Origin: Botryllus schlosseri
Lineage: Eukaryota
DNA length: 64,000 bases
Direction of reading: 5' to 3'
Assembly: GCA_051294905.1 (NCBI GenBank)
Contig: CM119384.1
Span: 4,588,001 to 4,652,000, forward strand
The position numbers and the translations under genes were made by a program. The notes under the pieces were generated by a model. The model saw nothing but the letters and a program-made list of their open reading frames with translations, had not been told where the DNA came from and ran no database searches. Shown piece after piece: positions 45,126 to 63,735 of the stretch (position 1 is the first letter of the stretch; every line of letters begins with the position of its first letter).

Positions 45126-47049
45126 GTCGTAATCCAGCATTAGCCATGGATATGCGTTGTGAGGAGTACAAGAGATTCAACTGTAAACGCGGTTGTTGGA
45201 ATTTGCTTCATCAGGATTAAATCGCGATTCAGGTTTCTATGGAGGCCAGGGACTTTTTGAGCCAAAGCGGATGCAGCAGTGTGACATCAAATATTTGAAT
45301 TATATTTCGTGACTGTTTTATTCTCCATGCACCTGCGTATAACGGTTTCGCATTGATATTTTCGCTTCTGTGAAAAATTACTTTTTGGTCCATTTGTCCC
45401 CAAATCTCTGACCTCAGTGTTCACATTTTGCCTTTGTGGAATTCGATCTCAATACCAGCGACTTGGTTCCTAATGGTGATTAGAGTGAGACCATAACACC
45501 GCTGTCGGGTGGTTATAATGAACATATTCGGCATTTGCTGTCTTGGGGGATTAATTGATGGAAGAATTTCGTCCTAAGAATCTAAGCATTTGTCAAATAT
45601 GTGTTGAATAATTACGACTATTTTTTCATTTCCTCAAAATTGCTTCGCGGGCCGGATGAAATCGTCTGGCGAATCGAATGCGGCCCGCGGGCCGTATGTT
45701 TGACACCCCTTACCTAGAGTTTTGCTTGTGTCCACACCATATATGACACCACCGGGGCATTACACAATGACCGTTTTATTTATAGAGCGGATTTCACTAC
45801 TCACATATGATAATAATTATTCAATCTACAGAGTACACTGGTATATATCCTATGTCTTTTGTAAAGCCGTCAACAAATACGATGAAAATCTAATTTATTA
45901 TCTTCACATAAATCACTTCCTTGGCCGAGAGCACGATACAGTAAGACACCCCAAAGAACAGATAAACGATAGTAGGTTAGGGCATGAAGCACACGAAATC
46001 AATATTAAAGACAGGAACACATGTAAGTAATGATAAATAATATCAATTGGACAGGACGCCGATTAATTACTATAGTCCTGTATTCTGAAATACACGAACA
46101 TGACAGTGACAGCTGGACGTTTCACGCATGCTTGTACCAAGGTCCCAGGCGGAATATTTGAATTCCTGGGTCTATCATGAATATGCGTGTTACTAATTCA
46201 TTCAGAGGACGACTAGCTTGATTTTTTCACTTATTTTTATTATAAAGGAACTTCGTCGTCTCTATCGTGGAAACATCGAGGTGCGCAGACACCTATATGC
46301 GGTCATGGCCAAAGTCCATCGCCGACCAAATGTCGGATCGTTATATTGAGGAAATAAAATCATTTAACCACGAAATGAGCTTGATATTGATATAGGTAGT
46401 GCATTTCCGGAAAAAATCTTCCACGCATTAATTGATTCAATAATTTTGACGTGCATTTTATGCAACGCAAGCATTAACTCATTATCATTCGACTTGCTAG
46501 TGATGGGGACACCAGACATTAACAGTTCGATGAAATTGTGATAAGTTATCTGACACTTTATCACTTCTGCACAGCATGATAAGCGCCTCATGGGCTGCTC
46601 TTTTTATTATATGCTCTGGTAAGCAGATCTATATTTTTGCGTAAGATCGTGATATCACTCTGCAGATATCTTTGCAGGCATTGCGATGAGGCCGATACTC
46701 GGAGAGTGGAGGTACGTATATGAGATTGATCATTTAAAAGGCCGTTGGGTTTAAGATCAGATTCGTCCTATTTTATTACGTTGATCGTCAGGCGAGTGCA
46801 TAGAGACAACCCAAAAAGGTCATATCGCACAAAAATACACATGGATATGGGTTGTAATGTAATTGATGCGAAGGTATACTAAAAAGGTAGTCAACCGACG
46901 AGTGATCCCCTATTTTCTTGAAGATATCCCGTTATAATGTCTGTTAATGTTCGTTGCCAATAGTGTCCTCTTTCTCGGCTCTCAAAATAGGGTAACCTTC
47001 AATTCGATACCACACCAGTCGCTATACATTCCAATTGGCCACTAGTGAG

Positions 47050-47746: not shown

Positions 47747-48505
47747 TCTGCTAGTGAGGTCCCATGGAAACATATTAGTGATTAATGCATCCCTACTAGC
47801 GCTAAGCCGCAGATCCAACTTTTACAACCTATTAGATGCTGAAGGTATCTGTCGGTTTAAGAATTTAAAAAAATATTATGCGGTAACCGAACTGAAGACG
47901 AAAAGCTGATATTATATGCATGAAATCCAATCCCTTCACGCCCCATCGGTGCTATTTTCCAAATTCTCGCTATAGCTAATTAAAAATAGGCATCGTTGCT
48001 ATGGCCGTTATAGCAGCGAGAACACGCTGGCATGCAGTAAGTAGGCCTATGTAAATAGCGTCCATAATGCTCAAATTCACGATCAAACATCTTCAGGATA
48101 GAAGACGGTGCATATCGTTCCGACGGTCAAGTGAGAGGTGAGTGGATGTGCTTGGACATGGCATCGTAAATCGATCATAGTGTGTGCTAATTAATATTGA
48201 GATTCAAACATTTAAGTATTGGATTGCGATAAACAGAGGTCGACTACTTACCGACGCGTAGTGGTATTGCTGCTTCAATATTCTATAGTTTGAAGTCTCG
48301 GTATTGGTGTACAATTTATGAATAGTTGAAGAAATTTCCATCAAAACCGCGTGAATATTCGCTGTGTTCTGTAATCGAGAAAATCCATCTTAGGTCGGCG
48401 ACAAATTGATCAAAGAGAGGGTCAGTCAAAGGCGTCACCTGGTTGGTTTGAAAATGGTTCGATACTCTTCATGGATTACATAATGAAACGCTTATTTGTT
48501 CCTAG

Positions 48506-48700
48506 CTGACATATGCAAGCAGCCCGAAATAATAGACAAAGACCGCTACGCGTTCGTGCAGGACTGTATAAACTATTACATATGCATAAATGGCGAACTT
48601 TACCACGACCAATGCCCGTCTGGCCTTGCTTTCGATCCGTCGTCAATGCTATGTGACGATCCGGGTCGTGTGAAGAATTGTTCACATATATCGAACACAA
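48506..48700 (+). CDS. Exon encoding a CBM14 / peritrophin-A chitin-binding domain
   Basis: cctag acceptor and gtgagt donor, phase 1-1. CKQPEIIDKDRYAFVQDCINYYICINGELYHDQCPSGLAFDPSSMLCDDPGRVKNC has six Cys with the C-x5-C and CPxGLxFD hallmarks of CBM14. Confidence 0.9.
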
Positions 48701-51700
48701 GTGAGTTCTAACATTCATATTGATCGATGAATTTGAGGAGTCTAGATCGACAACCCTCGAGACGAGAATTGTGTAATTTTTTGATCACTCGACTTGACCC
48801 GAGTCATTTTCTGAAATATGGAAAGTGACTCAAGTTATGGTAGTCACTTTGTGTATTGACTAATATTGTACTATTGTAGGCTACTACTTTCGGGCTCAAA
48901 TCACATTTTCACTAGAGCTATTACAAGCAAGCCACCGAATTCGAGACCAATGTACACAACACGATTTCAACTCTGAAATTGGCAATATGGTGAAATTACA
49001 TTGGTTTTTGTATTACTGGTTTCTGTGAATAGTAAATTACCCCATAGAGGGGGGCCCCGTGGATATACTCAGCTATCGCAGCTCCCGCAGCTATCGCAGC
49101 TATCACTACTGTGTATATACTCAGCTATCACAGCTACCGCAGCTATCACCAGAAATCGCAGACATACAGGTCATTTAAAGGTCACGTATCGTTTAGGGCG
49201 CAGCTATCAGCTCAGCAGCACGTCTGGGTTCAAATAGTGCGCAGCTATCAGCTCCGGAGCACGCCCGTATGCAAATAGTGCGCAGCTATCAGCTCTGGAG
49301 CATGCCCGGATGCAAATAGTGCGCAGCTATCAGCTCAGGAGCATGCCCGGATGCAAATAGTGCGCAGCTATCAGCTCAGCAGCACGTCTGGGTTCAACTG
49401 GTGCGCAGTAGGGCTGTTCAAAAATAACTTTTTTTCCCGATTCAAGCCGGTCACCTCTTAAATCGTCAGGTTACCCTAAAAAACGACGCGCACCAAATTT
49501 GAATTCATTCCAACCAATATTCGATGGTTACGTGAAGCTTGAAAAATTTGAATTTTCCCAAAAACGCAAAAATTATATATTTCCCAAATTTTTCTGCCAA
49601 CCCCATGAAATTGTTGAGCTATCTTCAAAGACGTTGCTAAACAAATTTGAGTCAATTCCGACCAGTAGAAGCGGAGTTATGTGAGTTTTTCGTTGATAAA
49701 TCGCGGATTATCCACCAATCAAGGATAATCCGAGAAATATCAACGAAAAACTCCAATAACTCCGCTTCTACGGCTTGGAATTGAGTCAAATTTGTTTTGC
49801 ATAGTTTTTGAAGACAGCCCAACAATTTCATGGGGTTGGCAGAAAAATTAGGGAAATAAATTTTTTTGCGTTTTGGGGAAAATTCAAAATTTTCAAGCTC
49901 TACGTAACCATCGAATATTGGTTGGAATGATTTCAAATTTGGTGCGCGTCGTTTTTTAAGGTAACCTAACGATTTAATCACGTAGCCAGGAAGATTCAGC
50001 GAAAAAGGTTATTTTTGAACAGCCCTATTGAAACAAATTTAGATGGTACAATAGCCTACACCACCCATCTACACTTCCGTGAGAATATAAGCGGACTGAC
50101 TATAGTTGTTCGATTTAAATCATACAAAAGGGTTTGTAAAGGTGGGCACTGCGCAACTTAAACATTGAGCCGTCTAAGAAACAGAGACACATGGCTATTA
50201 GATTAATCTACTACTACGGCATCATCATCATCATTAGTTTATTAGCAATTTTATCAGTTCAATACACCACGAAAATGCGATACAATGAAAAAAAAGACAG
50301 GGAGGTGTCGAAGCGACTTGGAGTAGTCTATGGAATTAGACACCAACCTTGGCCTAGGCTAGTGGCTCCCAACCGAGGGGGGGGGGGTTGTTAGGGGGGA
50401 ATGTGGCTTTGGCGTTGTATCGGAAGATACACAGGGTTCACAATGTGTGGCGAAATAGCGCAGTGGTAAACTCCACAACTGCAACACCATAAATGGGTTC
50501 TGGGTTCGAGTCCGACCGAGATCGACTCCCAGAATTCCTATACCTGAGTGTTAGGGTTTATCTAGGCTCCTCCTTGCCATCTCATCCGTGTAAGCGGTGT
50601 CTTATAAAAGCCTATAGAAGTCGGCCGCTACGGAATATAAAAAATGCAGGAAATTGGCCTGGTGTAAATGACCATACTAGTCAACAGTCAACACACACCA
50701 TGAACACCTCAATACAAACCAACTGGGTTCACAAGGTTTTTAGATTTTTATGGTAGAACTGTTATGTAGAAACTAATTCTTTACAACTGTATGTTTCTTT
50801 GGCGGATTTTCAGCTGGGTGTATGTTTAAATGCCTTCCGTAGAAATATACACCCCATGATAAAGTGAGGCTCGCGAGACGATTTTGTTGGGCCCGCGGCA
50901 GCCTCCCGACTAAATTGCTACTAAGCAGGAAAAAGTCAAGCTGAATTCAGCACAAGGTCGCTGGTACCTTTTTTAAGTCAACTTATGTGCTAATGTGAAA
51001 AACATATCAATTTCATCGATTCGACTCAAGGCCATAGCAAGCGGGCTTATAGTGATTTATGCTTCTTCAGCGGCTACCTGACCGGTAAAAAAACAGGTCA
51101 AGTTTAGCTGTACTTTACCACAGTGTAGGGTAGTGTGGTACGCATTCGACATAGTTCGGACATATCTGAATATGATTGTTCAGCGATTGCTCAGTCAACA
51201 ATGGTTGTGCGTTAAAAAGCACCTTTTTTAGCCACAGGCAAATTTTTCGCAGGGGGGAATTTCAACTCAAATATCGGCCAAAGGGGGCCACGAGACGAAA
51301 ATGGTTGGGAACCACTGGCCTAGGCGATGTAAAGAGGAGGCATGAAACACTGAACGAAAAGTAAAGAAGATAGCATAGAAAAAAGAAAGAGTGATTTAAT
51401 AGACAGCGATTACTTAATGACTTGAAATTGACTCGAAAATTTTGCTCAGAGTCACGAGTCAAGTCATGACTCGAGTCATCCCAACCCTGGTCCAGACGTG
51501 CTCTGGAGCTGTTAGCTGCGCACTATTTGAACCCAGACGTGCTCCTGAGCTGATAGCTGCGCTCTATTTCAACCCGAATGTGCTCCGGAGCTGATAGCTG
51601 CGCACTATTTGAACCCAGACATGCTCCTGAGCTGATAGCTGCGCACTATTTGAACCCAGACGTGCTCCTGAGCTGATAACTGCGCACTATTTGAACCCAG

Positions 51701-54700
51701 ACGTGCTCCTGAGCTGATAGCTGCGCACTATTTGCATCCGGGCATGCTCCGGAGCTGATAGCTGCGCATTATTTGAACCCATACGTGCTCCGGAGCTGAT
51801 AGCTGCGCACTATTTGAACCCAGACGTGCTCCTAAGCTGATAGCTGCGCACTATTTGAACCCAGACGTGCTCATGAGCTGATAGCTGCGCACTATTTGAA
51901 CCCAGACGTGCTCCTGAGCTGATAGCTACGCACTATTTGCATCCGGGCATGCTCCGGAGCTGATAGCTGCGCACTATTTGAACCCAGACGTGCTCCTGAG
52001 CTGATAGCTGCGCACTATTTGAACCCAGACGTGCTCCTGAGCTGATAGCTGCGCACTATTTCAACCCAGACGTGCTCCTGAGCTGATAGCTGCGCACTAT
52101 TTGCATCCGGGCATGCTCCTGAGCTGATAGCTGCGCACTATTTGAACCCAGACGTGCTCCTGAGCTGATAGCTGCGCACTATTTGCATCCGGGCATGCTC
52201 CGGAGCTGATAGCTGCGCAATGTTTGAACCCAGACGTGCTCCGGAGCTGATAGCTGCGCACTATTTCAACCCGGACGTGCTCCGGAGCTGATAGCTGCGC
52301 CCTAAACGATACGTGACCTTTAAATGACCTGTATGTCTGCGATTTTTGGTGATAGCTGCGATAGCTGTGATAGCTGAGTATATCCACAAGTGATAGCTGC
52401 GATAGCTGCGGGAGCTGCGATAGTGGAGTATATCCACGGGGCCTAGAGGGGTGATAGAGTGGAAATATAGTAACTAGGGCATGGGGTGTCAAACATACGG
52501 CCCGCGGGCCACATCCGGCCCGTCAGACCATTTCATCCGGCCCGCGAGGTCATTCTGAATAAATTGAAAATTTATTGTATTATACAGCACATTTCTAATG
52601 GAATTAAATGTCGAACATGTTTATCGGCCACACTATTACCATCTGTCGACAGTGTTGATTTCTAACTCAAGTAGCCTAACTATCAGGAACAAGGCAGTGA
52701 CATTGACACTGCATAATGGGAAAGCAAAAAAGTGCCCTTACTGTTCAGAGTTTTCTGGGAAAGAGGACCAAATAATAGGTATTCACAGAGGCAGAAACGA
52801 CAATGAAACGGCTTCCATTAGAAATGTGCTGTATAATACAATAATTTTTCAATTTACTCAGAATATATGAATATTAGACATGAATATTATAATAGATACA
52901 CGAAGCATAGAATTCAAATATCTCTGGTCGCACTGCTGGTAACATTACTCGCTGACCCCGGTCTCCAGAGAAATCGAATAGTAAATTGGTCATATAAAAA
53001 TGATGAACAAAATTCCTGCGACCTCGTTTACAATCTCTTATATTCCTCACAACAAATACGCAGGGCTCACGACGCATCACGATTACAGCAAGACATTATT
53101 GAAATCTTCCAAGTTATATCTTCGTTAGATACTTTGTTTAGAGGTTTACAACTGAATTCAATCGTCAAATCATCGCATATTGTCAATTCCATTGTCTGCG
53201 AATAACGGTGTCGCTAGAATAGGGCCCATATGATCCGTGATATAATATATTATAGTATTTCGCCTGTAGGTTGAAAATACAGCATTCCAGTGAAAAACAA
53301 AGGTATGTAGGCTATTTGGACTTTCGAGGTAACATTTTGGGTCATTTGACTATGGTCCGGCCCGCGAGCGATCAAAACATTTGAATCTGGCCCGCGACCC
53401 GAGTTGAGTTTGACACCCCTGAACTAGGGTATTGTATGTTTATATTGGTGATCCAACAGGCATTCCATTGAAATTTCGAAGAATAGTAAAATTACCGCAT
53501 TATTGGTAGTTCTATCTCTTCAGTGCCGATACACGAACAATACACCCATAAACATTCTTTTATCTATAATAATAATAACCATGTCAAGCATAAGAAAAAT
53601 TGGTGTATACGTGCATTATGAATGCGCGGCAAAGTTGTAGAAATGTAAGCTGAGCATGACTTGTACTCATCTCTGTACAAGTGTACAAACAGTGACCACT
53701 GACCCTTACGACTTGGACACGGGCTCGACTCTCAACACTACGACTCGCACTCAATCCTTTGCAGCCTGACTTTACTCGAGTCAAGGTGTAAAAGTATGGC
53801 TAACTTGTGACTCAGAACATTATGACTCTGTTTCAACCTTGTGTAAATGTATTATATGTAATGTTGTGTCAAAATAAAGGAAATCGGCCTGGTGTAAATG
53901 GCCACTGTAGTCGAAAACGCCACGAATACCACAAACAAACAAACTCCTTGTGTTACGTGATAATCATCTTGATTGTTATAACCTTAACTATCATCTGCAG
54001 GATGCAACTTAGTTTGCCTAAATGGAGGTTATTGTCTGGGAGAATCTGCATGTCAATGTCAACAAGGATACTACGGATATCGCTGCAGCTATGGTAAGCA
54101 ATTATAAATGCAATTGAAATTTGCATTTTTCTGAATTGAGCATAGCTGCCAGTCAGTAACTTTTATCGTTTTTATGAATGCATTGTAATTTCCTGTTCAC
54201 ATCAGGGGGATATGATAGACCACCAGGTTTGCCACTGCAGAATAATGTATGGAACACCAGCATGTGTGTATTGTATGGGACTGGTCATGTAATCACTTTT
54301 GATGGCTACGCTTACGATTTTCCTGGAGCATGTCAATACGAGATGGCATCATCTTCAAATTCTCACGACTTCAAGGTACACCCTGTGTTCCCTTTTGATT
54401 GCATTGTCTTGTTGAATTTTATTGTTGGTAAGCTTGACTGTGACATGCAGTCAGGTTACATTTTATACTGCGGTAATTTGAAATTGTATCAGCTGTATGC
54501 ATTCATATTGTCCAGGTACTTGTTCGTCGAAATCCTGCCTGTATTTCTGGTGGAGAGTATCGATTTGATGCTATGCCTTGCATTACTGGCGTTAGCATAC
54601 TGGTTGGTCAAGCCAGCAAAATTTCAATAACGGGCTCCACTGTTGAAGTGAATGATCAAAGGTAAAGTTTGCTACTTCATTACTATAAATTATTGACCTG

Positions 54701-57700
54701 GAGATCTTGTATCAAGTGTTTAAGTTGTTGCAAATATATTTCAGATATCAATGATGATAAAGTATTAACTTGATACTAACATATTTTTTGATACAATACT
54801 GTATAATTTTGAAAACAACTGAAATCTGATAGGCGGAAGTGATATTTCCAGATAAAAAGTGGCATATTACCAATACATTTTAACTCGATGGCATATGTTT
54901 ATATTGTTTCCTGATGTATGAGCAATTGAGCATGAGCATGCAATTCAATGAAAGACAGCAGTTGAGCATAAAACTAATCCACATGCTGCATTCTTGTATG
55001 TGACTTATACATACGAATTATGATTTGAATTTTCTCTTATGGACATCACTCCTTATCAAATATAAATGTATTACATATATAATATATGTTGCCATTTGGT
55101 ATGAAGTTTATTACAACCGTGGCTGGAATATCCTTTCGGTCTTTCAAGTTATTTCATGTGACAATGTGATTGCTCGCGTGACAAATTGTCCTCGTGATAA
55201 TCTTTCAGCTACTATGGAATTGTTGCTGATTTGCAGCTTCTGACACTTTAATTTCTGAGCTCTTTCTTCAATATATATCCTTATTTTTAGCATTTCCATG
55301 CCATACGACGGGTACGGATTGCTGATAAGCAAAATGGACCCATATGTTATCGTCAGAGTCGGAGACATGGTGTTGAGATGGGATCATCTTTTGGGTGCGG
55401 TGTATGTGGTACTGCATGGCGATCGATATTTGAATGACACTGCTGGCCTGTGTGGAAAGTTTGACCACAATAGAGACAATGACATTACCAACCGTGCATG
55501 TAAGTCTAATGATGAAATGATTTACTAGAAAAAATAAATCCAATATACAGAATCTTATGTAAATCAACGAGTTAAGTATGCAAAATTGTTAATGATGGGC
55601 TAGTGTGTCCACAAATATTCTCCTCGTATTTTTTAATTAGATCATATCCACTTACAGACTTCAAACTCGGGCAAAATTATTATTTAATGCATTTACATGT
55701 GTTCTTCTAATGACATGTTTGTTTTCAAATGTGGTAATAATTCCAGTTATAACTACCAAAAATGATTACCGGTATTGATATTTTATGATGCAATATGATA
55801 CATCCGTATTGAACAGAGCCATCCAATTGTATTCATGAGGTAAGTCCCGTATATCTCTTTTAAATCCTTTTATTTTCAATACATAAATTCAACCATGAGC
55901 AATTGAGTATCCATTTCAATCAAATTCATTACATCGCATTACATTTTATCGCATTGTATATGTGTGCGTCTTGTGATGAAAATATAACTCAACGATTATT
56001 GATTGCCACAATTTTTATTGCTCACATTTTCAAACATTTTCGGAAATGAATTTATGTTGTCATGTTTACCAGATAGTCACAGGCGTAAAGTGTTTTCCTC
56101 AATATATTATCTATATTACATAAATATTGCAGTGGACACTATTCGTCTTTCCACCGATGGAATCCATTTAATGGCAAAATCCTGGAAAGTAAACGATAGA
56201 AACGAAGAATGTGCAGATACCATGGACCTGGCTGAGGATAATGTAACTCAATGTGTACAGCAAGAGGTAAGATTTGGACTTCAAATTTCATTTTCATGTG
56301 CGTCTAATTGATCAGTGACATTGATCATGTTATATGAGATGTCTAACGATTTTCCTTGATGGTTCGTACTATAAATTTGCACACCATCAAATATGTGCCA
56401 GATTCAATTTGATTCTGTATACCGGTATATATTTATCCACACCACATTGTTACTATTGCAGGATGTTGTGAGGATATGCAATTTTCTGTGGTTGAGCTTT
56501 TTCGAAGACTGTCACTCTCAAGTACCAGTTCACGTATTCGAAGAATTGTGCCACCAAGAACTATGCCGGTGTGATTATCTCAGTACTGTGGAGTGTCATT
56601 GCAATATCATAACACAATACTCGAGGTTTTGTGCGGCAGCAAAAGGAAAACCTTCAAGTTGGCGGACTCCCACTACTTGCGGTAGGTTAGACTTGATAAA
56701 ATATGAAGTAGAACTTTTTATGACATCCTACATCATCGTATAATATATTTTAGGATTTCCAATAAGATGCAGCTTTTTGTAAGGATTGTCTTTCTGCATA
56801 CTTGTTGGAAATTTCTGTTCACTACAAAAAAGCAGTAATGTTCGGCTATATATGTATTATCGTATAAATTATGAGGTGTCAACATCATTCTGTGACATTG
56901 ATACTTGTACAAGGTCAATTTTAAATATGTGTCTTAAGAAATGGTGCCGTCAGAAATTGCTTGTCTTCAACTTCGGTGAACATTGCAAAATCTGAACATC
57001 AAGTGCTTTGTATCATTGGTTGCTTGTCAAACTTTCAGAAAAAAAATGTGACTGGGGCCAGGTTTGGACTGAATGTGGAGAGGAATATCCTTCCACTTGT
57101 TCTGTGCCGTGGACCGTGTTCAACCAGGGATGTATAGATAGATGCCAGTGCCCGGAAGGTAAAGATGCTAGCTTGATGGTTTGTGTTTTCGAAGATGTGT
57201 GCTGAGAATATCATAATGCAACAATTTATATACGTTTTCATTTGGCGATAAATCAAAAAAATATATGATTTCTGTTTTAAAATACTCCCAGAAGTTGAAA
57301 TTTTAGATTACTTTGTAGCAAACAGCAAACAGATCTCTAAGGTATTGTCATTTATTTTGCTTCAACACCTGATGAAGGAGCGGTGATCCGAAAGCTCATG
57401 TGTCGATAGCCGATTGTTCATAGTGTACATGCGCGACAAGATATCAACATCCTAAGTAAATTTAAATGTAACCTCTAATCTTGATTCCTTAAAGTCATAT
57501 AATAGATCAGAAATCGCTATCGATTTCTAGACTGGGACTCAGTTTATATTGCTTTAATTTCTGACAAATGTATAATTTAAACACTCTGTTGGGTGTGAAA
57601 GTGGTGTATTCCAAGATACTGTAATAACAACGTTTGCGAAATTATTTTATAATGAGGAAATATCGGTAGCAAGTATACAGAAACGCGTTTTACACTCTGC

Positions 57701-60700
57701 TCAATATCAACGTAGCAATACTCAGACGCCGAATACATTGTCCGGTCTGGCCTAGATCGTTAAGGCGTAAGCTTATATTCACATGCAAGTTGTCGTCGTG
57801 ATTGTTGGCAAATCGATGAAAGATATTGATTTTATGGGATTATATTATCATTTGATTACCCCAGTTGATACATTTGGCGACTTTTCAAACGTCAATATGT
57901 ACTTCAGTATTGTCACATTATATGGCCCGAGTCGTCGAGTATCGTGTACATTATTATAGGCTATCACTTCACTGAAATGTAGGGTTGGAATTAGCAATAT
58001 GACGTCACGTGACGTCATGAGGTTCACGTTCGCGTTCACACAGAACCTTTCAGAGGTTCACACCATCCCTAGTAATTATGCTCGTCAACACTATGAGATG
58101 ACACGAATTCTATAACTTTATCAGGTACTCAGGTATGAACTCATTCTCTTCATAGCTGTGCTTTCTTTTTGATAGGCACATACCACCATGGTTCTCAATG
58201 TGTAAATGAGGCAAACTGCCCATGCATACATAATAATGTGGAATACAAGCCTGGGGAAAAGGTGTCATTGTACAATTGCCATACCTGGTAAGGACAGACA
58301 CATGTTAATCCGTACTCGAGTGATCGTATTTGATGTTTGATTTTGCAGTATCTGCACCATGGGCGAATGGTCATGTGATGACGCAACGTGTCCTGGAACA
58401 GCATTTATTCATGGATTTTCACATTTCAAAACGTTTGACGACAATTTTTTCACCTTTCAGGGCAAATGCAAGTAAGAATCAACGTCAGAGTTATCACTGG
58501 TTCAAGTGTGGTAGCGCCGTCATTATATTATGAAAATAGGGCCCAGGGTCAAGGGTAGACCATGGAACTGATCATTAGGCCTTTTTAATCTCTCCATAAA
58601 TTGTTAATTCATTAGCCACAAGAGTTAAAAATCTTGTCAATTCTAGAGTTTCTATCAATGTTTGATATATTTTTTAGGCACAGTGATATTGTATGATGTG
58701 TTTTGTAGATATCTGTTGGCTGAAGACACCGGCAAAAGCTTCTCAATCATTATCGAAAATTCCGATTGTGGCGCAGATCCCGGGATTACATGCACGAAGT
58801 CATTCACTGTGACGCTTCGTTCATACGGAGCAGAACAGGTGCGTGGAATATTCACATATCTATTATTATGATTATCTTTTATTACTGTTTTGTTCCAACT
58901 TGATACCGGGGACCATATTCTATAAAATAATCTGTCTGTTGTGTTCCAGGAAATCAAATTTCGTTACGGTGGTACCGTAAGCATCAACCACTTTGATGTT
59001 CAACTGCCGTATATATCAGGTATGGCAATTCTAGTACCTTTAATTGATATTCTGTAACTTGGTCACACTTAACCTTCTAAAGGGTTTGACGGGCACATCC
59101 TCCACACATTGTCTTGCAGTCTCACGATGAAAAGAAGGCCGTTGCAGGTCTGGTGCGAGACACTTGTTACTTTTTATTCTTTTTTAGGTGGTCTCATTGT
59201 AGAAAGGGAATCATCGTTATCGTACTTGGCAAGAGATGTTACCACTGGGTTAGAAATTTCCTGGAACGGGAAAGGCGTAGCATTTTTCACAATACCACAG
59301 AAATATGCAGGTTGGTCAATTGTTTTTGCATTCTTTGGATTGTCGGATGATTTTATACTGTTTGAATTTCTTAAAATTTAGAGCAAGTCAGAGGATTGGT
59401 TGGAAATTACGATTCAAATGCAGCAAACGATTTTGTTACATCTGGCGGAGTAATCGATGAGAGGGTGATTTCGTTTGGAAATTCTTGGAAGTTGGGCATC
59501 AACTGTCCCGATGCTATTTCTGACGAAACAAAACCGTGTCAAATAAACAGTCAAAGAGGTTGGTAATTATAATTGGCTGTGCATTGTACATAGTCTAAAA
59601 ATATAGCTAAAACTCGTCTGCCGGATCTTGAAAATTCAACATTCACTCTTGCATTCGCAATGGTGATCATATTTTCCTCTGAATCAATACTCAATTACCA
59701 GTGGCGAGATAGCGCAGTGGTATAATCCGCGGCTGCAACACCAATGGGTGCGGGTTCGAGTCCGACCGAGGTCGACTTCCGAATTCCGATACCTAAGTGT
59801 TGGAGGTTTACCTAGGCTCCTCCTCGCCACTTCATCTGCGTCAGCGGTGTCTTACAAAAGCCTAGAGGTGGGCCGTGCTACAAATCGGCAGTTACGGAAA
59901 AATAAGAAGAATATCGGCCTGGTGTAAATGACCATAGTAGTCGACGAACACCATGAATACCCCAAAAACAAACAAACTCAATTACCAGACAGATTCATAA
60001 TTTACAAGTCCCTGTTTCAAAATTTATTAAGCTACTCAAGGGGATGAAAAATTTGCTTGTGAACAAATAAACTGTGTATATCTATAAAATGCCTAAATTA
60101 TATCGTATGATACTTGATAAGATGTTTCCTGATATATTTTAAGACCAGTCATGGGAACGAAAGGAAATTCTTGAATACATATGTCAGACTTTAATGTATA
60201 TTTATAACTGACTGTAACAGACTGTATCTGTATAACAGATCTGCTTTAATATTTGCTAGTGATGCTAGAAAGGCCAAAGTCATCCATATCATTCTTGTTC
60301 CAGAGCCGTATGCAAAAGAGATGTGCGCAAAGCTGTATGGGGATACGTTCCGGTCGTGCAACGATGTAATCGACCCGATTCCATATCATAAAAATTGTTT
60401 GTATGACGTTTGTGAATGTCAAGGTGACATGGAAAGAGATTGTGTTTGCGATTCTCTGGCCGTTTATGCCAGAGCCTGCTCATTCAAAGGTGTCACCTTG
60501 AAGTGGAGAGCGAGTGGATTTTGTGGTATGAATATGAATATCTCTCGCATATATAACAGTTGATATAGGCCTTTATGTGCAATATCCCCTTTGTACATCT
60601 GTGTAATCTTTCGTGATTGACTAAATGCTTGGAAAGAATACTAGTTGAGGCATGAACTGTAGTTTTTTTACCTAATAGGTTCAATCTGATAATAATTCGT

Positions 60701-63700
60701 TATTGTATCACAACATAATCTTTACACTTGGAAATATTATCTTAATGTATTAGTGGGTTCTATACAATGTTCCCTCTAAGCTGCGCACGTACGCAAATGC
60801 GCAGTGCTGACATGGTCTCTGCGCACAGGAAATCCAAGTTGCGCACAAAAAATCCAAAGTTATGACCTTTTTGGAGTCGTTACGCACTATTGTCCAATAG
60901 GGCTCTTCAAAAATGACTTCTTTTCTCATATCGTACTGGCTATTTGATACAATTGTTAGGTTACCTAATTTAAGCCTACACACAAAAATTGGTTCAATTC
61001 CAGGCAGTAACCGCTTTGCTACAGGAGAAGAAAGTTTCTATTTATTATATAAAAATAAATGATAAGAAATTTGAACATTTTCTATTCACTCCATGAAAGT
61101 GTTAGGCTGTCTATAGAAACGATGCTCACCAAATTTGGTTCAATTCCAACCAGTGGAAGCGAAGTTATTGCCATCGAAAAATTCGGATTCGAATAAAATA
61201 GTATTTACGGTGACCACAACTATAATAAATAAACAAAGAATCGGTCACCGTAAATACTGTTTCATGGGGTGAATAGAAAATTTTCAAATTTTTTATTATT
61301 TATTTTTATATGATAAATAGAAACTTTCTTCTCCTGTAGCAAAGCGGTTACTGGCTGGAATTGAACAAAATTTTGTGTGTAGGCTTAAATTAGGTAACCT
61401 AACAATTTTATCAAGTAGCCAGTACGATTCGAGAAAATAAGTCATTTTTGAAGAGCCCTATTGTCCAAGGGTCTGCGCAGTGAGTTTGTGAGTGTGCGCA
61501 GACTCGTCAAAAATTAGAGAGAACATTGGTTCTATACTCATAAGCGTCTCTTGGTTAACATAATCAATGTTGTAATGCTGGTCGTAATAATATCGATGCT
61601 TATATCAGAAGTGGTACGTTTTCACAGATGCTCAATGTACTGGAGGCGAGGAATTTCAGCTTTGTGGCAGCTCCTGCAAACGGACTTGCCGATCATTGTC
61701 TCTTCCGGAACTTTACTGTACAGCGAACTGTGTCGAAGGTTGCAACTGTCCAGCTGGGCTCTACAGAAATCCTGAAGGTACTCACGTTTATGTGTTTGTA
61801 GGTTCGCTGTCTGGTATGTATCCTTGCATTCAGGTGTATGCGTTGAAAAGGAATTTTGCCCTTGCTACAATTTGGGAATGTGGTACGAGCCTGGACAAAC
61901 CATTCACCATGTCGGAATTATGTGGTGAGATGATTTAGATATATAATTCTAATATAATTTTCACTTTTTCCATGATAATTTAGCTTGAATTTAGCTCCAT
62001 CACAATATCTAACAGTATATAAATATTGTGACTTATATGTGCAAGTTGTTTTTAAAGACGTTCCTCATCTCACCATGAGCTGCCAAATATTGTTGTAGGT
62101 TTTTTTCATTCAATATTGTGAGGATTGTCGGATACATTATGTGTGAGCATTGCAAAATCTGAAAGATGAAAACAATAGCTCTAATTTTATGATCTTATGT
62201 AGCGAAAACATACATTAATATGTATGAATGAGGCGCCCATCTTTTTCCAGCCAATGCGTCGCTGGGGTGTTGAAATGTGAAGGCGAGGGCACTTTTCCCA
62301 CCATATGCCCGATCGGTCAAGTTTACAGGAATTGTACCGCTGAAACGATAGCTGCATCAGCATGGATTGGCGGGATAGAATGCGCAAAAACTTGTCAAAA
62401 CAGAGACCTGTCTTGCCCTAAAGTTGGTTGTGAATCAGGTATATTGAGAAGACCATTGGTTTGTTCTGTTGATTTAATCCACTACCAGCTGCATCTGTAT
62501 ATTTTTCCATGTACAATTTACATGGCCTGTTTGTGAAAAGTTTATAATGTAGTGGTAATTAATAACTCAGTATTGTCGGAATATCTAAATATCGATTGAA
62601 ATATTCTTTAAGCGGTGTTCAACCATTTATTATCAGGATGCATGTGCCCTGATGGACTAGTTCTTCACCAGGAAAAATGCATTTCACCCACGGATTGTCC
62701 CTGCTATCACAACTACGAATATTACGACAACGGCAAGGAAATACAATTAGATTGCAACACATGGTATGTCTTTTTTGGCTATTTGCAGTGACCATCTGAA
62801 CATGAACAGAAACTACATTATCCCTAATCCACAACATTCCATATTTAGCAGTACCATGTCTAGTTTATATACTAATGTGTAGCATATGAAGTTTCCACCA
62901 TGTTTCACAGCACTTGTAAATCCGGTAAATGGTCATGTACTAAAGTTATGTGCGACGGTGAGTGTCATGCTATCGGCGAATCCCATTTCTCGACATTTGA
63001 CGGGAAAGAATTTGATTTTAAAGGAGACTGCGAATACCTTTTAGTTCGGGTATGTCTAATATTTTCCTCTTATTCCTCCTTTTTTTATATAATTGTGGGA
63101 TTTGCAGGACTTCTGTGGGAACAACCCTGAAAATGGCACGTTTGTTATCTCATATATGTCAAACTTATGCGAAACCTTGGGATATACATGTTCGCGGACA
63201 GTACATATCACACTCGGGGTGAGAATCAATGATTTCTTGCCGTAGCAAAGTGGTACCGGTATCATTGGTGGAGTTATGAATATAAGGAATCCCATCCACA
63301 TGAATTGCATAACAATCCGGAAACACACTTATTTCAAGTTCAATACATTGTCAGTCAGCATTGTTAGCAATTCATCTTACTTGCATATTGAAATGTAAAT
63401 TGCCGTTTTCATTGATCCTTGTATTAGTTGATACTTGCTATATCTCAAACATCACATTGAATGGTAGCAATCTCTGAAATTCTTTTTCTGTTTTTCACAA
63501 AGAAATTTTCCATATTTATAAACCGCATGCAACAATCTATTTCTAGCACTCATTAATAACTTTGAAGTCCGGTGTAGCACCGATCGTGGCAGAAAATCCA
63601 AATCCTCTTCAGCAAGGCATTCCGTTTCAAATATCGAATCATGGATTCTTTGTCTATGTCACTACTGGTATCGGTGTGAGAGTCTTGTGGGATCAAGCCA

Positions 63701-63735
63701 CGAGAATATACATCCATCTGTCGCCGGTTTACAAG
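48506..63735 (+). CDS. Gel-forming mucin / hemolectin / VWF-like secreted protein, 5' part (CBM14-EGF-VWD1-C8-TIL-E-VWD2-C8-TIL-E-TIL'-E'-VWD3...); continues beyond the window; first exon not found
   Basis: 22 phase-consistent exons: 48506-48700,54001-54093,54206-54375,54516-54661,55291-55499,56133-56266,56462-56681,57039-57158,58176-58287,58349-58471,58709-58838,58950-59019,59188-59310,59382-59558,60304-60525,61628-61777,61834-61924,62251-62438,62637-62763,62911-63049,63108-63218,63547-63735 (3239 nt). Motifs: GTGHVITFDGYAYDFPGACQY, GLCGKFD, C8 (CHCNIITQYSRFC; CVCDSLAVYARAC), TIL (CIDRCQCPEG; CVEGCNCPAG), GESHFSTFDGKEFDFKGDCEYLL. Joining the first (CBM14) exon to the rest is inferred from phase and orientation. 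Confidence 0.88.
49190..49408 (+). repeat. 41-bp minisatellite, about 5 units
   Basis: Unit GCGCAGCTATCAGCTCAGGAGCACGTCTGGGTTCAAATAGT, inverted relative to 51491-52300. Confidence 0.9.
49409..50027. mobile_element. hAT-type MITE (TAGGGCTGTTCAAAAATAAC family)
   Basis: Inverted termini TAGGGCTGTTCAAAAATAAC...GTTATTTTTGAACAGCCCTA; no TSD visible. A related fragment lies at about 14660-14930. Confidence 0.8.
50447..50723 (+). mobile_element. tRNA-derived SINE (tRNA-Cys-like head)
   Basis: A box TAGCGCAGTGG, B box GGTTCGAGTCC, CTGCAAC anticodon-loop-like sequence, (CAAA)-rich tail. TSD GGGTTCACAATGT/GGGTTCACAAGGT. Homologous to 59701-59977. Confidence 0.85.
51491..52300 (-). repeat. 41-bp minisatellite, about 20 units
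   Basis: Period 41 (e.g. 51601 to 51642). Two variants (GAACCCAGACGT and GCATCCGGGCAT); no spacers. Confidence 0.95.
52480..53421. mobile_element. Charlie/Buster-like hAT non-autonomous element
   Basis: CATGGGGTGTCAAAC...GTTTGACACCCCTG with GGCCCGCG subterminal repeats; perfect TSD AACTAGGG. Related end fragments lie at about 19040-19072 and 45645-45710. Confidence 0.85.
53871..53944 (+). mobile_element. 5'-truncated copy of the same SINE (3' tail only)
   Basis: ATCGGCCTGGTGTAAATG..CCA..GTAGTCGA...(CAAA)3 matches the 3' ends of the two full copies. Confidence 0.75.
57845..58071. mobile_element. Right-end fragment of the TAGGGATGGTGTGAAC MITE family
   Basis: Ends GAGGTTCACACCATCCCTA; near-identical to 22860-23131. 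Confidence 0.8.
59701..59977 (+). mobile_element. tRNA-derived SINE (tRNA-Cys-like head)
   Basis: A and B boxes, CAAA tail, 12-bp TSD ACTCAATTACCA (59689-59700, 59976-59987). Confidence 0.88.
60765..61528. mobile_element. hAT (Tip100/Arthur-like) MITE containing a nested MITE
   Basis: CAATGTTCCCTCTAA...TTAGAGAGAACATTG; perfect TSD GTTCTATA (60757-60764, 61529-61536). Confidence 0.85.
60898..61460. mobile_element. hAT MITE (TAGGGCTCTTC family), nested
   Basis: Perfect termini and TSD TTGTCCAA (60890-60897, 61461-61468). Confidence 0.92.

What the first reader, a model, noticed from the sequence alone, without database searches (positions are those of the whole stretch)
48506..63735. Chitin-binding gel-forming mucin: CBM14 and EGF fused to a D1-D2-D'-D3 assembly
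Seen: a six-Cys CBM14 exon and an EGF exon (CNLVCLNGGYCLGESACQCQQGYYGYRC), both phase 1-1, upstream of a complete VWD-C8-TIL series. Established: D1-D2-D'-D3 is the polymerisation module of MUC2/5/6 and VWF; CBM14 binds chitin, as in peritrophins; vertebrate gel-forming mucins lack CBM14. From memory and unverified here, a Ciona gel-forming mucin with chitin-binding capacity has been reported in the chitin-based gut barrier, so this may be its orthologue or a new paralogue. Inference: the protein could cross-link a mucin gel to chitin fibres in gut, endostyle net or tunic. The symmetric phase-1 exons suggest exon shuffling.
Basis: partly seen in the sequence, partly recalled or inferred. Interest (0 to 1): 0.7.

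Follow-up and report, generated by a model that had tools for sequence, protein, structure and literature searches.

The report
Chitin-binding head on VWF/mucin-type giant protein
A sea-squirt-type genome encodes a giant secreted von Willebrand factor/gel-forming-mucin relative whose transcript starts with a chitin-binding (CBM14) module and an EGF module. Ciona has the same head, so this is a further member of a kind reported in 2018, though here it has almost no mucin (PTS) region.

Summary
Exon 48506-48700 is a six-Cys CBM14 (Pfam 47 bits) and exon 54001-54093 is an EGF. Both are phase 1-1 and precede VWD-C8-TIL exons for D1, D2, D' and the start of D3. D3 finishes about 3 kb past the window.

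One RNA-derived contig joins CBM14 to EGF to the first VWD exon through GT..AG introns, so they share a transcript.

The nearest relatives are Ciona and Clavelina "VWF-like" genes (43-51% identity, 100% clade support). They sit in a chordate group with MUC2/5AC/5B and VWF. The Ciona gene has the same CBM14-EGF-D1 head with the same intron phases; the Clavelina gene lacks CBM14.

Both D3 interchain cysteines are kept. There is no furin site. The CGLC motifs of D1 and D2 are lost in all the tunicate sequences.

An ab initio exon chain runs in frame to a cystine-knot exon: about 90 exons and about 6,100 aa. It holds only a PTS stretch of about 45 aa, so this is not a true mucin in this species.

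Chitin binding, tissue, the 5' exon, and orthology to the published Ci-GFM1 remain untested. Verdict: a new member of a known kind, of moderate interest.

The parts
46576..46618 (+). Hypothetical first coding exon: ATG plus a 14-residue hydrophobic signal-like peptide, with a phase-1 donor CTG|GTAAGC
   Evidence: Best phase-compatible ATG/donor candidate upstream. Inference only; no read evidence.
48394..48441 (+). Short hydrophilic linker exon just upstream of CBM14. The 3' end is firm; the 5' end is uncertain (48380 is an alternative).
   Evidence: An RNA contig joins 48441 to 48506 across a 64-nt GT..AG intron. There is an in-frame stop at 48372-48374 and no ATG after it, so a further upstream exon is required. 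Acceptor scores are weak.
48506..48700 (+). CBM14 (peritrophin-A) chitin-binding module exon, phase 1-1
   Evidence: Pfam CBM_14 47.2 bits. PDB sequence matches to the CBM14 modules of chitinases and chitotriosidase, a squid beak chitin-binding protein, Der f 23 and tachycitin. RNA joints on both sides.
49053..52443 (.). Repeat element inside the 5.3-kb intron. Terminal inverted arms of about 300-360 nt are built of 41-bp tandem units.
   Evidence: Very high, two-stranded depth in all runs. Not part of the gene product.
54001..54093 (+). EGF-like module exon, phase 1-1
   Evidence: Joints 48700>54001 and 54093>54206 are seen in RNA contigs from two runs.
54206..58287 (+). D1 assembly (VWD1, C8-1, TIL-1, start of E1). 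Exons: 54206-54375, 54516-54661, 55291-55493, 56133-56266, 56462-56681, 57039-57158, 58176-58287.
   Evidence: Spliced alignments to five guide proteins agree. The chain is in frame. Domain hits.
58349..61924 (+). D2 assembly (VWD2, C8-2, TIL-2, E2). Exons: 58349-58471, 58709-58838, 58950-59019, 59188-59310, 59382-59558, 60304-60525, 61628-61777, 61834-61924.
62251..62763 (+). End of E2, then D' (TIL', E'). Exons: 62251-62438, 62637-62763. No furin site at the D2/D' junction.
62911..63735 (+). First part of D3 (VWD3). Exons: 62911-63049, 63108-63218, 63547-63735. The gene continues beyond the window.
   Evidence: Continuation at L002:295-540, 1351-1507 and 3010-3169.

Best explanation
Shown: this is the 5' quarter of one very large plus-strand gene of a tunicate. 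Its mRNA encodes, in order, a short linker, one CBM14 chitin-binding module, one EGF module, and the D1-D2-D'D3 assemblies typical of von Willebrand factor and gel-forming mucins.

Predicted: the reading frame then continues for about 44 kb beyond D3. It passes through a Thr-rich linker of about 45 aa, four repeated Cys-rich super-modules with faint VWD/C8/TIL character, and a 6.5-kb exon of VWC-like repeats. It ends in a C-terminal cystine knot. The total is about 90 exons and about 6,100 aa.

Inferred mechanism: the secreted protein dimerises tail-to-tail through the cystine knot and head-to-head through the two conserved D3 cysteines, as VWF and MUC2 do. Because no furin site separates D2 from D', the D1-D2 region stays attached, as in mucins. 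Each head-to-head junction would then display CBM14 modules. The polymer would bind and cross-link the animal's own chitin fibrils. The most likely site is the chitin-framed gut barrier membrane described in Ciona.

It is the orthologue of a Ciona 'VWF-like' gene that has the same CBM14-EGF head. It belongs to the same kind as the published Ci-GFM1.
For: - One transcript: run X8 contig (1,735 nt) joins 48441>48506, 48700>54001 and 54093>54206, all GT..AG. A second run joins EGF to VWD.
- Domains. The exon chain has 27 exons, no stop, and AG/GT at every boundary.
- Family: the best hits are Ciona savignyi H2YI88, amphioxus mucin-2-like, and MUC5B/5AC/2. In the D'D3 tree, this gene plus Clavelina plus the two Ciona species form a clade at 100/100. 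That clade sits in a chordate clade with MUC2/5AC/5B, VWF and amphioxus mucin-2-like at 96/95, apart from SCO-spondin, hemocytin and FCGBP.
- Conserved head: Ciona P0269 aligns from inside CBM14 through EGF, D1, D2 and D3, at 43% identity over 1,116 aa. The phase-1 boundaries around the EGF exon are the same. This locus is the only one in its own genome that matches P0269 collinearly, and the only CBM14 hit next to a VWD locus.
- Polymerisation: the equivalents of VWF Cys1099 and Cys1142 are present, and 89 of 99 Cys shared by VWF, MUC5B and MUC2 are kept. There is no R-x-K/R-R site anywhere in the model.
- Cystine knot: 29 bits against a local profile, plus weak Pfam DAN/Cys_knot hits.
- Substrate: the genome has exon-level chitin-synthase-type matches.
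- Published precedent: Ci-GFM1 carries one CBD and is abundant in the proteome of the chitinous gut membrane (PMC6109156).
Against: - Chitin binding is inferred from sequence only. The AlphaFold model was unusable (pLDDT 45).
- No tissue information was available.
- Only one contig shows CBM14 inclusion. Since the exon is phase 1-1, isoforms that skip it are possible.
- The signal-peptide exon is not established.
- Everything beyond D3 rests on an ab initio chain tuned on this same gene, and one junction produces a split-codon stop. Continuity of D3 with the downstream exons has no read support.
- The CGLC motifs of D1 and D2 are lost (AGLC and RGLV). From memory, these were reported as needed for VWF multimer assembly, so N-terminal polymerisation may differ or be absent.
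- The Clavelina orthologue has no CBM14, so the module is dispensable in at least one lineage.
- The PF03142 matches could include other GT2 enzymes such as cellulose synthase; the control genomes also gave matches.
Confidence: 0.6

Rival explanations
1. Two genes. The CBM14-EGF-D1-D2-D'D3 unit is a complete, shorter gene that ends soon after D3. The Cys-rich exons from about 68 kb to the cystine knot at about 107 kb belong to a separate downstream gene.
For: There is no read evidence across the D3/downstream junction. NCBI splits the Clavelina locus into three models of 564, 797 and 3,613 aa. The downstream exons have no Pfam identity.
Against: The ab initio chain stays in frame, with no better terminal exon before 107436. 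Vertebrate and amphioxus guide proteins align past D3 into the Thr-rich exons. The Clavelina models abut on one strand with gaps of 87 and 558 bp, which looks like one split gene. A D1-D3 protein without a C-terminal dimerisation domain would be atypical for this family. Runs holding the 5' exons also hold 48-66% of the giant exon's words.
Confidence: 0.2
2. A blood or wound factor rather than a gut matrix protein. It would be a VWF/hemolectin-like clotting or pathogen-trapping polymer whose CBM14 recognises foreign chitin, for example fungal walls or food-borne chitin.
For: The D assemblies group as close to VWF as to the mucins; that node is unresolved. There is no large PTS domain. Hemocytin-type VWD proteins act in clotting (general knowledge).
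Against: No furin-cleaved propeptide like that of VWF. No VWA or discoidin domains were seen. The only experimentally placed relative, Ci-GFM1, is in the chitinous gut membrane (PMC6109156). The Ciona orthologue probably carries a huge PTS exon typical of secreted mucus.
Confidence: 0.15
3. The CBM14 is a structural or non-chitin module. It would bind another GlcNAc-containing glycan, or act only as a disulfide-rich spacer, and would often be skipped because it is a symmetric cassette exon.
For: It was lost in Clavelina without loss of the gene. The exon is phase 1-1. The X8 transcript differs from the reference in this exon at four non-synonymous sites and one synonymous site.
Against: All six Cys and the usual aromatic positions are kept. 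It is the top CBM_14 score in the genome. It has been retained at the same position since the split from the Ciona lineage. None of the polymorphic sites touches a Cys or an aromatic residue.
Confidence: 0.15

Closest known systems
Ci-GFM1, the gel-forming mucin of the Ciona intestinalis type A gut envelope membrane (Nakashima et al. 2018, PMC6109156; LC072665)
   Same: A tunicate protein with D1, D2 and D'D3 assemblies, a cystine knot, one CBM14-type chitin-binding domain, only a small PTS stretch (about 50 aa there, about 45 aa here), and conserved intermolecular cysteines.
   Different: Ci-GFM1 has 2,880 aa with a canonical D4, two VWC domains and FN2 domains. The model here has about 6,100 aa, no canonical D4 or FN2 detected, four divergent D-like super-modules and a 2,161-aa exon of VWC-like repeats. 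The position of the CBD in Ci-GFM1 could not be read and its sequence could not be retrieved, so orthology versus paralogy is open.
Ciona intestinalis 'von Willebrand factor-like, partial' (P0269; GCA_018327825.2 AP043572.1, held as L008)
   Same: CBM14-EGF-D1-D2-D'D3 in the same order, 43% identity over 1,116 aa, and the same phase-1 boundaries around the EGF exon. It is the sister lineage in the tree.
   Different: The Ciona CBM14 is split by an extra phase-2 intron. D3 is followed by an open 33-bp minisatellite of more than 8.4 kb, which probably encodes a PTS domain of more than 2,800 aa. The upstream neighbour is a carnitine acyltransferase gene, as in Clavelina but not here.
Vertebrate gel-forming mucins MUC2/MUC5AC/MUC5B and von Willebrand factor
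   Same: D1-D2-D'D3 head, D3 interchain cysteines, C-terminal cystine knot, and 37-43% identity in D'D3.
   Different: None of the listed vertebrate or amphioxus relatives has CBM14 in its Pfam list. They keep CGLC in D1 and D2. The mucins have long PTS domains. VWF has A domains and a furin-cleaved propeptide.
Insect peritrophins and intestinal mucins (CBM14 arrays with or without PTS)
   Same: CBM14 of the peritrophin-A type, proposed to tie a protein matrix to gut chitin fibrils (general knowledge).
   Different: Those proteins have no VWD/C8/TIL assemblies or cystine knot. They cross-link through many CBM14 copies in one chain, not through disulfide polymerisation of a chain with a single CBM14.

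Membership tests
Gel-forming mucin / VWF family | N-terminal D1-D2-D'D3 (VWD-C8-TIL-E x2, TIL'-E', VWD-C8-TIL-E) | tested here: met
   VWD 98, 146 and 150 bits; C8 49, 72 and 80 bits; TIL 38, 50, 43 and 22 bits on the spliced model. Exon-level Pfam hits. Tree placement.
Gel-forming mucin / VWF family | Cysteines forming the D3-D3 intermolecular disulfides (VWF C1099 and C1142) | tested here: met
   Both columns hold Cys in the alignment with human VWF, MUC5B and MUC2.
Gel-forming mucin / VWF family | C-terminal cystine knot on the same polypeptide | tested here: inconclusive
   A knot exon exists at L006:3259-3436 (29 bits against a local profile; Pfam DAN 21.5 and Cys_knot 16.3 bits). It is linked to D3 only by an ab initio chain.
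Gel-forming mucin (strict sense) | Long central Pro/Thr/Ser-rich O-glycosylated domain | tested here: not met
   The only STP-rich stretch is at about residues 1307-1352. No 100-aa window reaches 45% STP in the 6,098-aa model, and none is found in any frame from 64 to 124 kb.
Gel-forming mucin / VWF family | CGLC (CxxC) motifs in D1 and D2 | tested here: not met
   D1 reads AGLC and D2 reads RGLV. The motifs are likewise lost in Ciona and Clavelina but kept in amphioxus, the mucins and VWF.
Gel-forming mucin / VWF family | Canonical D4 assembly | tested here: not met
   No tblastn hit to any of 150 VWD proteins between 67.2 and 94.8 kb. Only weak VWD-like signals of 5-26 bits occur in four repeated modules.
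CBM14 (peritrophin-A chitin-binding module) | Six Cys with peritrophin-A spacing, and a profile score above the curated cut-off | tested here: met
   C-x16-C-x5-C-x9-C-x12-C-x8-C. 47.2 bits against a cut-off of 22.1. PDB CBM14 hits down to E 2e-7.
CBM14 (peritrophin-A chitin-binding module) | CBM14 fold | tested here: inconclusive
   The single-sequence AlphaFold2 model had a mean pLDDT of 45.5 and was not searched further.
CBM14 (peritrophin-A chitin-binding module) | Binding to chitin | not testable with these tools
   Needs a recombinant-domain pull-down on chitin beads.
Orthologue of Ci-GFM1 | Reciprocal best match or tree with the LC072665 protein | not testable with these tools
   The 2,880-aa protein did not appear in either long-query search. 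The alignment figure in the paper's supplement is not held as text.
EGF-like domain | Six-Cys EGF pattern recognised by a profile | tested here: inconclusive
   EGF_2 19.7 bits and EGF 19.6 bits, just under the cut-offs of 22.1 and 21.5. The pattern is conserved before D1 in Ciona, Clavelina and amphioxus.

The most novel reading that the evidence does not exclude
This may be a chitin-anchored, essentially PTS-free polymer of the VWF/mucin type. Between orthologues the 'mucin' region is extremely labile: about 45 aa here, Cys-rich modules directly after D3 in Clavelina, and probably more than 2,800 aa of an 11-residue repeat in Ciona. The CBM14 head is kept in two distant ascidian lineages and lost in one. 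The catalytic-looking CGLC motifs of D1 and D2 are gone throughout. If so, the scaffold would work primarily as a disulfide-linked chitin cross-linker. Mucin character would be an add-on gained and lost within tunicates, giving a molecular intermediate for the proposed shift from chitin-based to mucus-based gut barriers.
Probability: 0.3. Interest if true: 0.6.

Novelty: new member of a known kind. Interest (0 to 1): 0.4.

Why it matters
Nakashima et al. (2018) proposed that chordate gut barriers evolved from chitin membranes embedded in gel-forming mucin towards pure mucus. Their only molecular link was one Ciona protein, and its chitin binding was left untested.

This locus adds three things. 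A second, evolutionarily distant ascidian transcribes a CBM14 module fused to the polymerising D1-D3 head. The head architecture is shared with a Ciona gene down to the intron phases. The PTS content of these proteins can differ by orders of magnitude between orthologues.

It also offers a compact, expressible CBM14-EGF fragment for a direct chitin-binding test. The value is incremental rather than surprising, because the domain combination itself is already published.

Tried and rejected
- Separate-gene reading of the CBM14 exon: rejected by the spliced contig.
- Retrieving Ci-GFM1 or full-length tunicate orthologues with long profile queries (alignments A1 and A3): only amphioxus and vertebrate proteins were listed, and none had CBM14. 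This is uninformative about Ci-GFM1.
- Alignment A2, built from exon pieces: MAFFT scattered the pieces, so it was not used for a search.
- AlphaFold2 on the CBM14 exon alone: pLDDT 45, unusable, and no fold search was run.
- phmmer of the CBM14 against about 150 VWD proteins, and tblastn against 124 kb of this locus: no second CBM14.
- Synteny with the Ciona/Clavelina upstream carnitine acyltransferase gene: not found in the window.
- Signal-peptide exon: 46576-46618 is the best candidate, but the acceptors for the 48441 exon score poorly, so the 5' end stays open.
- Pfam on the giant exon and on ten central exons: nothing except weak knot hits in the last exon. The ESM Atlas gave only a weak VWC lead, score 0.78.
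- blastp self-comparison of the giant exon returned nothing; the repeats were found by a motif search instead.
- Rfam on the large intron: no family.
- First settings of my ab initio exon chainer over-split exons. After tuning it recovered 23 of 24 homology-defined exons, but it was trained on those same exons.
Full report
**What is in the sequence.** The window is AT-rich animal DNA (about 40% GC) with no gaps. It is G000:C14:4588001-4652000 of a 495-Mb assembly.

On the plus strand, exon 48506-48700 opens after a pyrimidine-rich ...CCTAG acceptor and closes before GTGAGT. It is 195 nt and phase 1 at both ends. It encodes a six-Cys module spaced C-x16-C-x5-C-x9-C-x12-C-x8-C, with aromatic residues at the usual peritrophin-A positions. 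Pfam CBM_14 scores 47.2 bits against a cut-off of 22.1. It is the highest CBM_14 score anywhere in this genome. It also matches solved CBM14 modules by sequence: insect and nematode chitinases, human chitotriosidase, squid beak chitin-binding protein 3, Der f 23 and tachycitin.

The EGF profiles score 19.7 bits, just under threshold.

The next acceptor in a compatible phase is 54206. From there, exon-level translations hit VWD, C8 and TIL.

**Gene model of the head.** I wrote a protein-to-genome spliced aligner. I ran it with five guide proteins: Ciona savignyi H2YI88, amphioxus mucin-2-like, bonobo MUC5B, piranha MUC2 and a second amphioxus protein. The guides agree on 24 exons from the EGF exon to L002:3010-3169.

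Joined to the upstream exons, the chain has AG/GT at every boundary and no stop over 1,295 codons. Profiles built locally from about 300 family members place the domains on this model as follows:
- VWD at 147-322, 511-685 and 978-1150
- C8 at 348-419, 706-777 and 1171-1243
- TIL at 421-477, 780-838, 876-945 and 1258-1309

That is D1, D2 and D'D3. C8-3 and TIL-3 lie just beyond the window.

**One transcript.** Runs were chosen by their content of the downstream giant exon. Their small size together with the spliced joints shows that at least X8 and X9 are cDNA.

Reads and contigs were laid on 48401-54400. A 1,735-nt contig of run X8 aligns to 48505-48700, then 54001-54092, then 54205-54379. The joints are GT..AG and skip 5,300 and 112 nt. 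The same contig also joins 48441 to 48506 across a 64-nt GT..AG intron and carries about 200 further nucleotides upstream. A contig of run X9 independently joins the EGF exon to the VWD exon.

The exon ending at 48441 has an in-frame stop 23 codons upstream and no ATG. The start codon must therefore lie in a further exon. The best candidate is 46576-46618, a short hydrophobic peptide with a strong phase-1 donor. It is unverified, and the acceptor scores at 48380 and 48394 are poor.

**Relatives.** A full-library search with the C8-2 exon, followed by tblastn of its 150 hits on the locus, ranks Ciona savignyi H2YI88 first at 46% identity. Amphioxus mucin-2-like and vertebrate MUC5B/5AC/2 follow.

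A search with H2YI88 brought in two further tunicate sets:
- Ciona intestinalis 'von Willebrand factor-like, partial' (P0269)
- Two adjacent Clavelina lepadiformis models (P0277, P0271)

P0269 aligns to my model from inside the CBM14, through EGF, D1, D2 and most of D3, at 43% identity over 1,116 residues.

In the Ciona locus (L008) the annotated start Met lies inside the CBM14 domain. The in-frame sequence upstream supplies the first Cys and the aromatic cluster, so the Ciona domain is complete but the NCBI model is truncated at its 5' end. The Ciona CBM14 has one extra phase-2 intron. The CBM14/EGF and EGF/VWD boundaries are phase 1, as here. The EGF exon is 96 nt against 93 nt here, and the first VWD exon 173 nt against 170 nt.

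Clavelina shares an upstream carnitine acyltransferase gene with Ciona, so those two are syntenic orthologues. Its model goes from a signal peptide through unrelated linker exons straight to EGF. No six-Cys CBM14-like open frame exists in the 2 kb concerned.

In this genome only the C14 locus matches P0269 collinearly from D1 to D3. No other CBM14 hit lies near another VWD locus; both searches give lower bounds.

A maximum-likelihood tree of D'D3 groups this gene with (Clavelina, (C. savignyi, C. intestinalis)) at 100/100. It places the tunicate clade in a 96/95 clade with vertebrate MUC2/5AC/5B, VWF and amphioxus mucin-2-like. SCO-spondin, hemocytin, FCGBP, zonadhesin and tectorin fall outside. 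The order inside the chordate clade is unresolved.

**Features that bear on mechanism.** In an alignment with human VWF, MUC5B and MUC2:
- The columns of VWF Cys1099 and Cys1142, the D3-D3 interchain disulfides, hold Cys here and in the other tunicates.
- There is no basic cleavage site between D2 and D'. The VWF-specific insert is absent, and there is no R-x-K/R-R anywhere in the 6,098-aa model. The D1-D2 region, and with it the CBM14, should stay on the mature protein, as in mucins.
- Of 99 Cys shared by the three vertebrate proteins, 89 are present. Two of the ten misses lie beyond the end of the model. The other eight lie at VWF positions 65/159, 308/321, 388/524 and 418/521.

By homology with the D3 disulfide map (recalled from memory, not checked here), those eight look like four whole disulfide pairs. 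They include both Cys of the D2 CGLC motif and the first Cys of the D1 motif. Ciona and Clavelina show the same losses, while amphioxus keeps CGLC. The loss is therefore a tunicate trait and not a modelling error.

CGLC was reported as required for VWF multimerisation (from memory). Head-to-head polymerisation is therefore plausible, because the D3 Cys are kept, but it is not assured.

**The rest of the gene (predicted).** I fetched 60 kb downstream. I then chained exons ab initio, with codon and splice-site scores trained on this gene. After tuning, the method recovered 23 of 24 homology-defined exons.

From D3 the chain runs in frame to a stop at L006:3436. It has 64 more exons, and the whole model is 6,098 aa with 11.4% Cys and 117 N-glycosylation sequons. 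One junction has a split-codon stop that marks a boundary error. After D3 the order is:
- A Thr-rich linker of about 45 aa, the only STP-rich stretch in the protein.
- Four repeated super-modules of about ten exons each. They show only weak VWD (5-26 bits), C8 and TIL signals and have no Pfam hit.
- A single 6.5-kb exon (L005:309-6793). It encodes 2,161 aa with 12.7% Cys and no Pfam hit. It holds at least five modules of about 200 aa with a VWC-like C-x-C-x2-C...G-x2-Y-x2-G-x-W core. The ESM Atlas gave a weak VWC lead.
- A cystine-knot exon.

No canonical D4 was found.

In Clavelina the model that abuts D3 is a 3,613-aa product without Pfam hits, and its first exon resembles the first post-D3 exon here. 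In Ciona, D3 and a similar Thr-rich exon are followed by an open 33-bp minisatellite of more than 8.4 kb. In the Thr-rich frame it reads as an 11-residue TTTGPGQTT-type repeat with a unique STP-rich lead-in. All three frames of such an array are open, so coding is probable but not proven.

**Comparison with what is known.** Nakashima et al. (2018) identified Ci-GFM1 as the third most abundant protein of the chitin-framed gut envelope membranes of Ciona. It has 2,880 aa, D1, D2, D'D3, D4, two VWC domains, a CK, FN2 domains, one CBD and a 50-aa PTS. The authors predicted, but did not test, that it lines the chitin wall (PMC6109156). A 2021 review says its localisation and function remain unknown (PMC7947342). 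Lang et al. (2016) count 17 multi-VWD proteins in Ciona (PMC4948705).

The combination of a CBD with a polymerising D1-D3 head in a tunicate is therefore published. The new points are these:
- The combination is transcribed in a second, distant tunicate.
- The CBD sits at the extreme N-terminus before an EGF, and this arrangement is shared with a Ciona gene.
- Clavelina has lost the CBD.
- The PTS content varies enormously between orthologues.

Whether the Ciona gene P0269 is Ci-GFM1 is open. Its probable giant PTS exon argues against identity. No Ciona protein of suitable length appeared in a profile search that included P0269, but the database may simply lack that sequence.

**Context for the substrate.** The genome shows exon-level matches to the chitin synthase family at four loci. 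Other GT2 enzymes could contribute, since control genomes also matched. Earlier notes of this scan report a chitin synthase gene and CBM14-bearing LPMO and mucin-like genes in the same genome. I did not re-examine those.

**Verdict.** The protein is a tunicate member of the VWF/gel-forming-mucin family with a chitin-binding head. It most likely acts as a disulfide-linked matrix protein that ties chitin fibrils together in a gut barrier. That function, the polymerisation and the 3' three-quarters of the gene model are inferences. In this species it is not a mucin by composition. It is a new member of a known kind, of moderate interest.

Noticed in passing
L005:309-6793 (G000:C14:4682309-4688793): A single 6.5-kb exon encodes about 2,161 aa with 12.7% Cys and no Pfam match. 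It contains at least five modules of about 200 aa with a VWC-like core. It is held at 44-66% of sampled words in small RNA-type runs.
   Followed up: partly
L002:7990 to L004:9720 (about 72-94 kb from window start): Four repeated Cys-rich super-modules of about ten exons each. They give only faint VWD, C8 and TIL signals against local profiles and no Pfam hits. They may be strongly diverged D assemblies.
   Followed up: partly
window 49053-52443: The 5.3-kb CBM14/EGF intron holds an element of about 3.4 kb. Its terminal inverted arms of 300-360 nt are made of 41-bp tandem units. A nested 171-nt palindrome lies at 49543-49893. The internal parts have very high two-stranded depth in all four runs, so it is a multi-copy, transcribed repeat.
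   Followed up: partly
L008:24673-33144 (Ciona intestinalis AP043572.1): Directly after D3 of the Ciona orthologue lies a 33-bp minisatellite of more than 8.4 kb, open in all frames. In the Thr-rich frame it is an 11-residue PTS repeat of more than 2,800 aa. It is not annotated as coding in the record.
   Followed up: partly
L008:9923-10048 and 10001: The NCBI Ciona model 'VWF-like, partial' starts at a Met inside the CBM14 domain. The in-frame sequence just upstream supplies the first Cys and the aromatic cluster of the domain.
   Followed up: yes
L015:10001-25278 (Clavelina lepadiformis OX392445.1): The orthologous Clavelina locus is annotated as three abutting genes of 564, 797 and 3,613 aa on one strand. 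It lacks any CBM14 exon between the signal peptide and the EGF exon.
   Followed up: partly
window 55460-55475 and 59385-59400 (the motif sites in D1 and D2): The CGLC motifs of D1 and D2 are AGLC and RGLV here, and are similarly degenerate in Ciona and Clavelina. The eight missing conserved Cys appear to correspond to four whole disulfide pairs.
   Followed up: partly
window 48552, 48557, 48570, 48634, 48656: The X8 transcript differs from the reference in the CBM14 exon at five sites. Four change an amino acid (V>A, I>M, D>N, D>G) and none is a Cys or an aromatic residue. The EGF exon shows no differences and the first VWD exon shows one, which is synonymous.
   Followed up: partly
G000:C11:12554223-12650446, C3:37385601, C12:22970107: Exon-level matches to the catalytic core of the chitin synthase family (PF03142) occur at four loci of this genome.
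   Followed up: no
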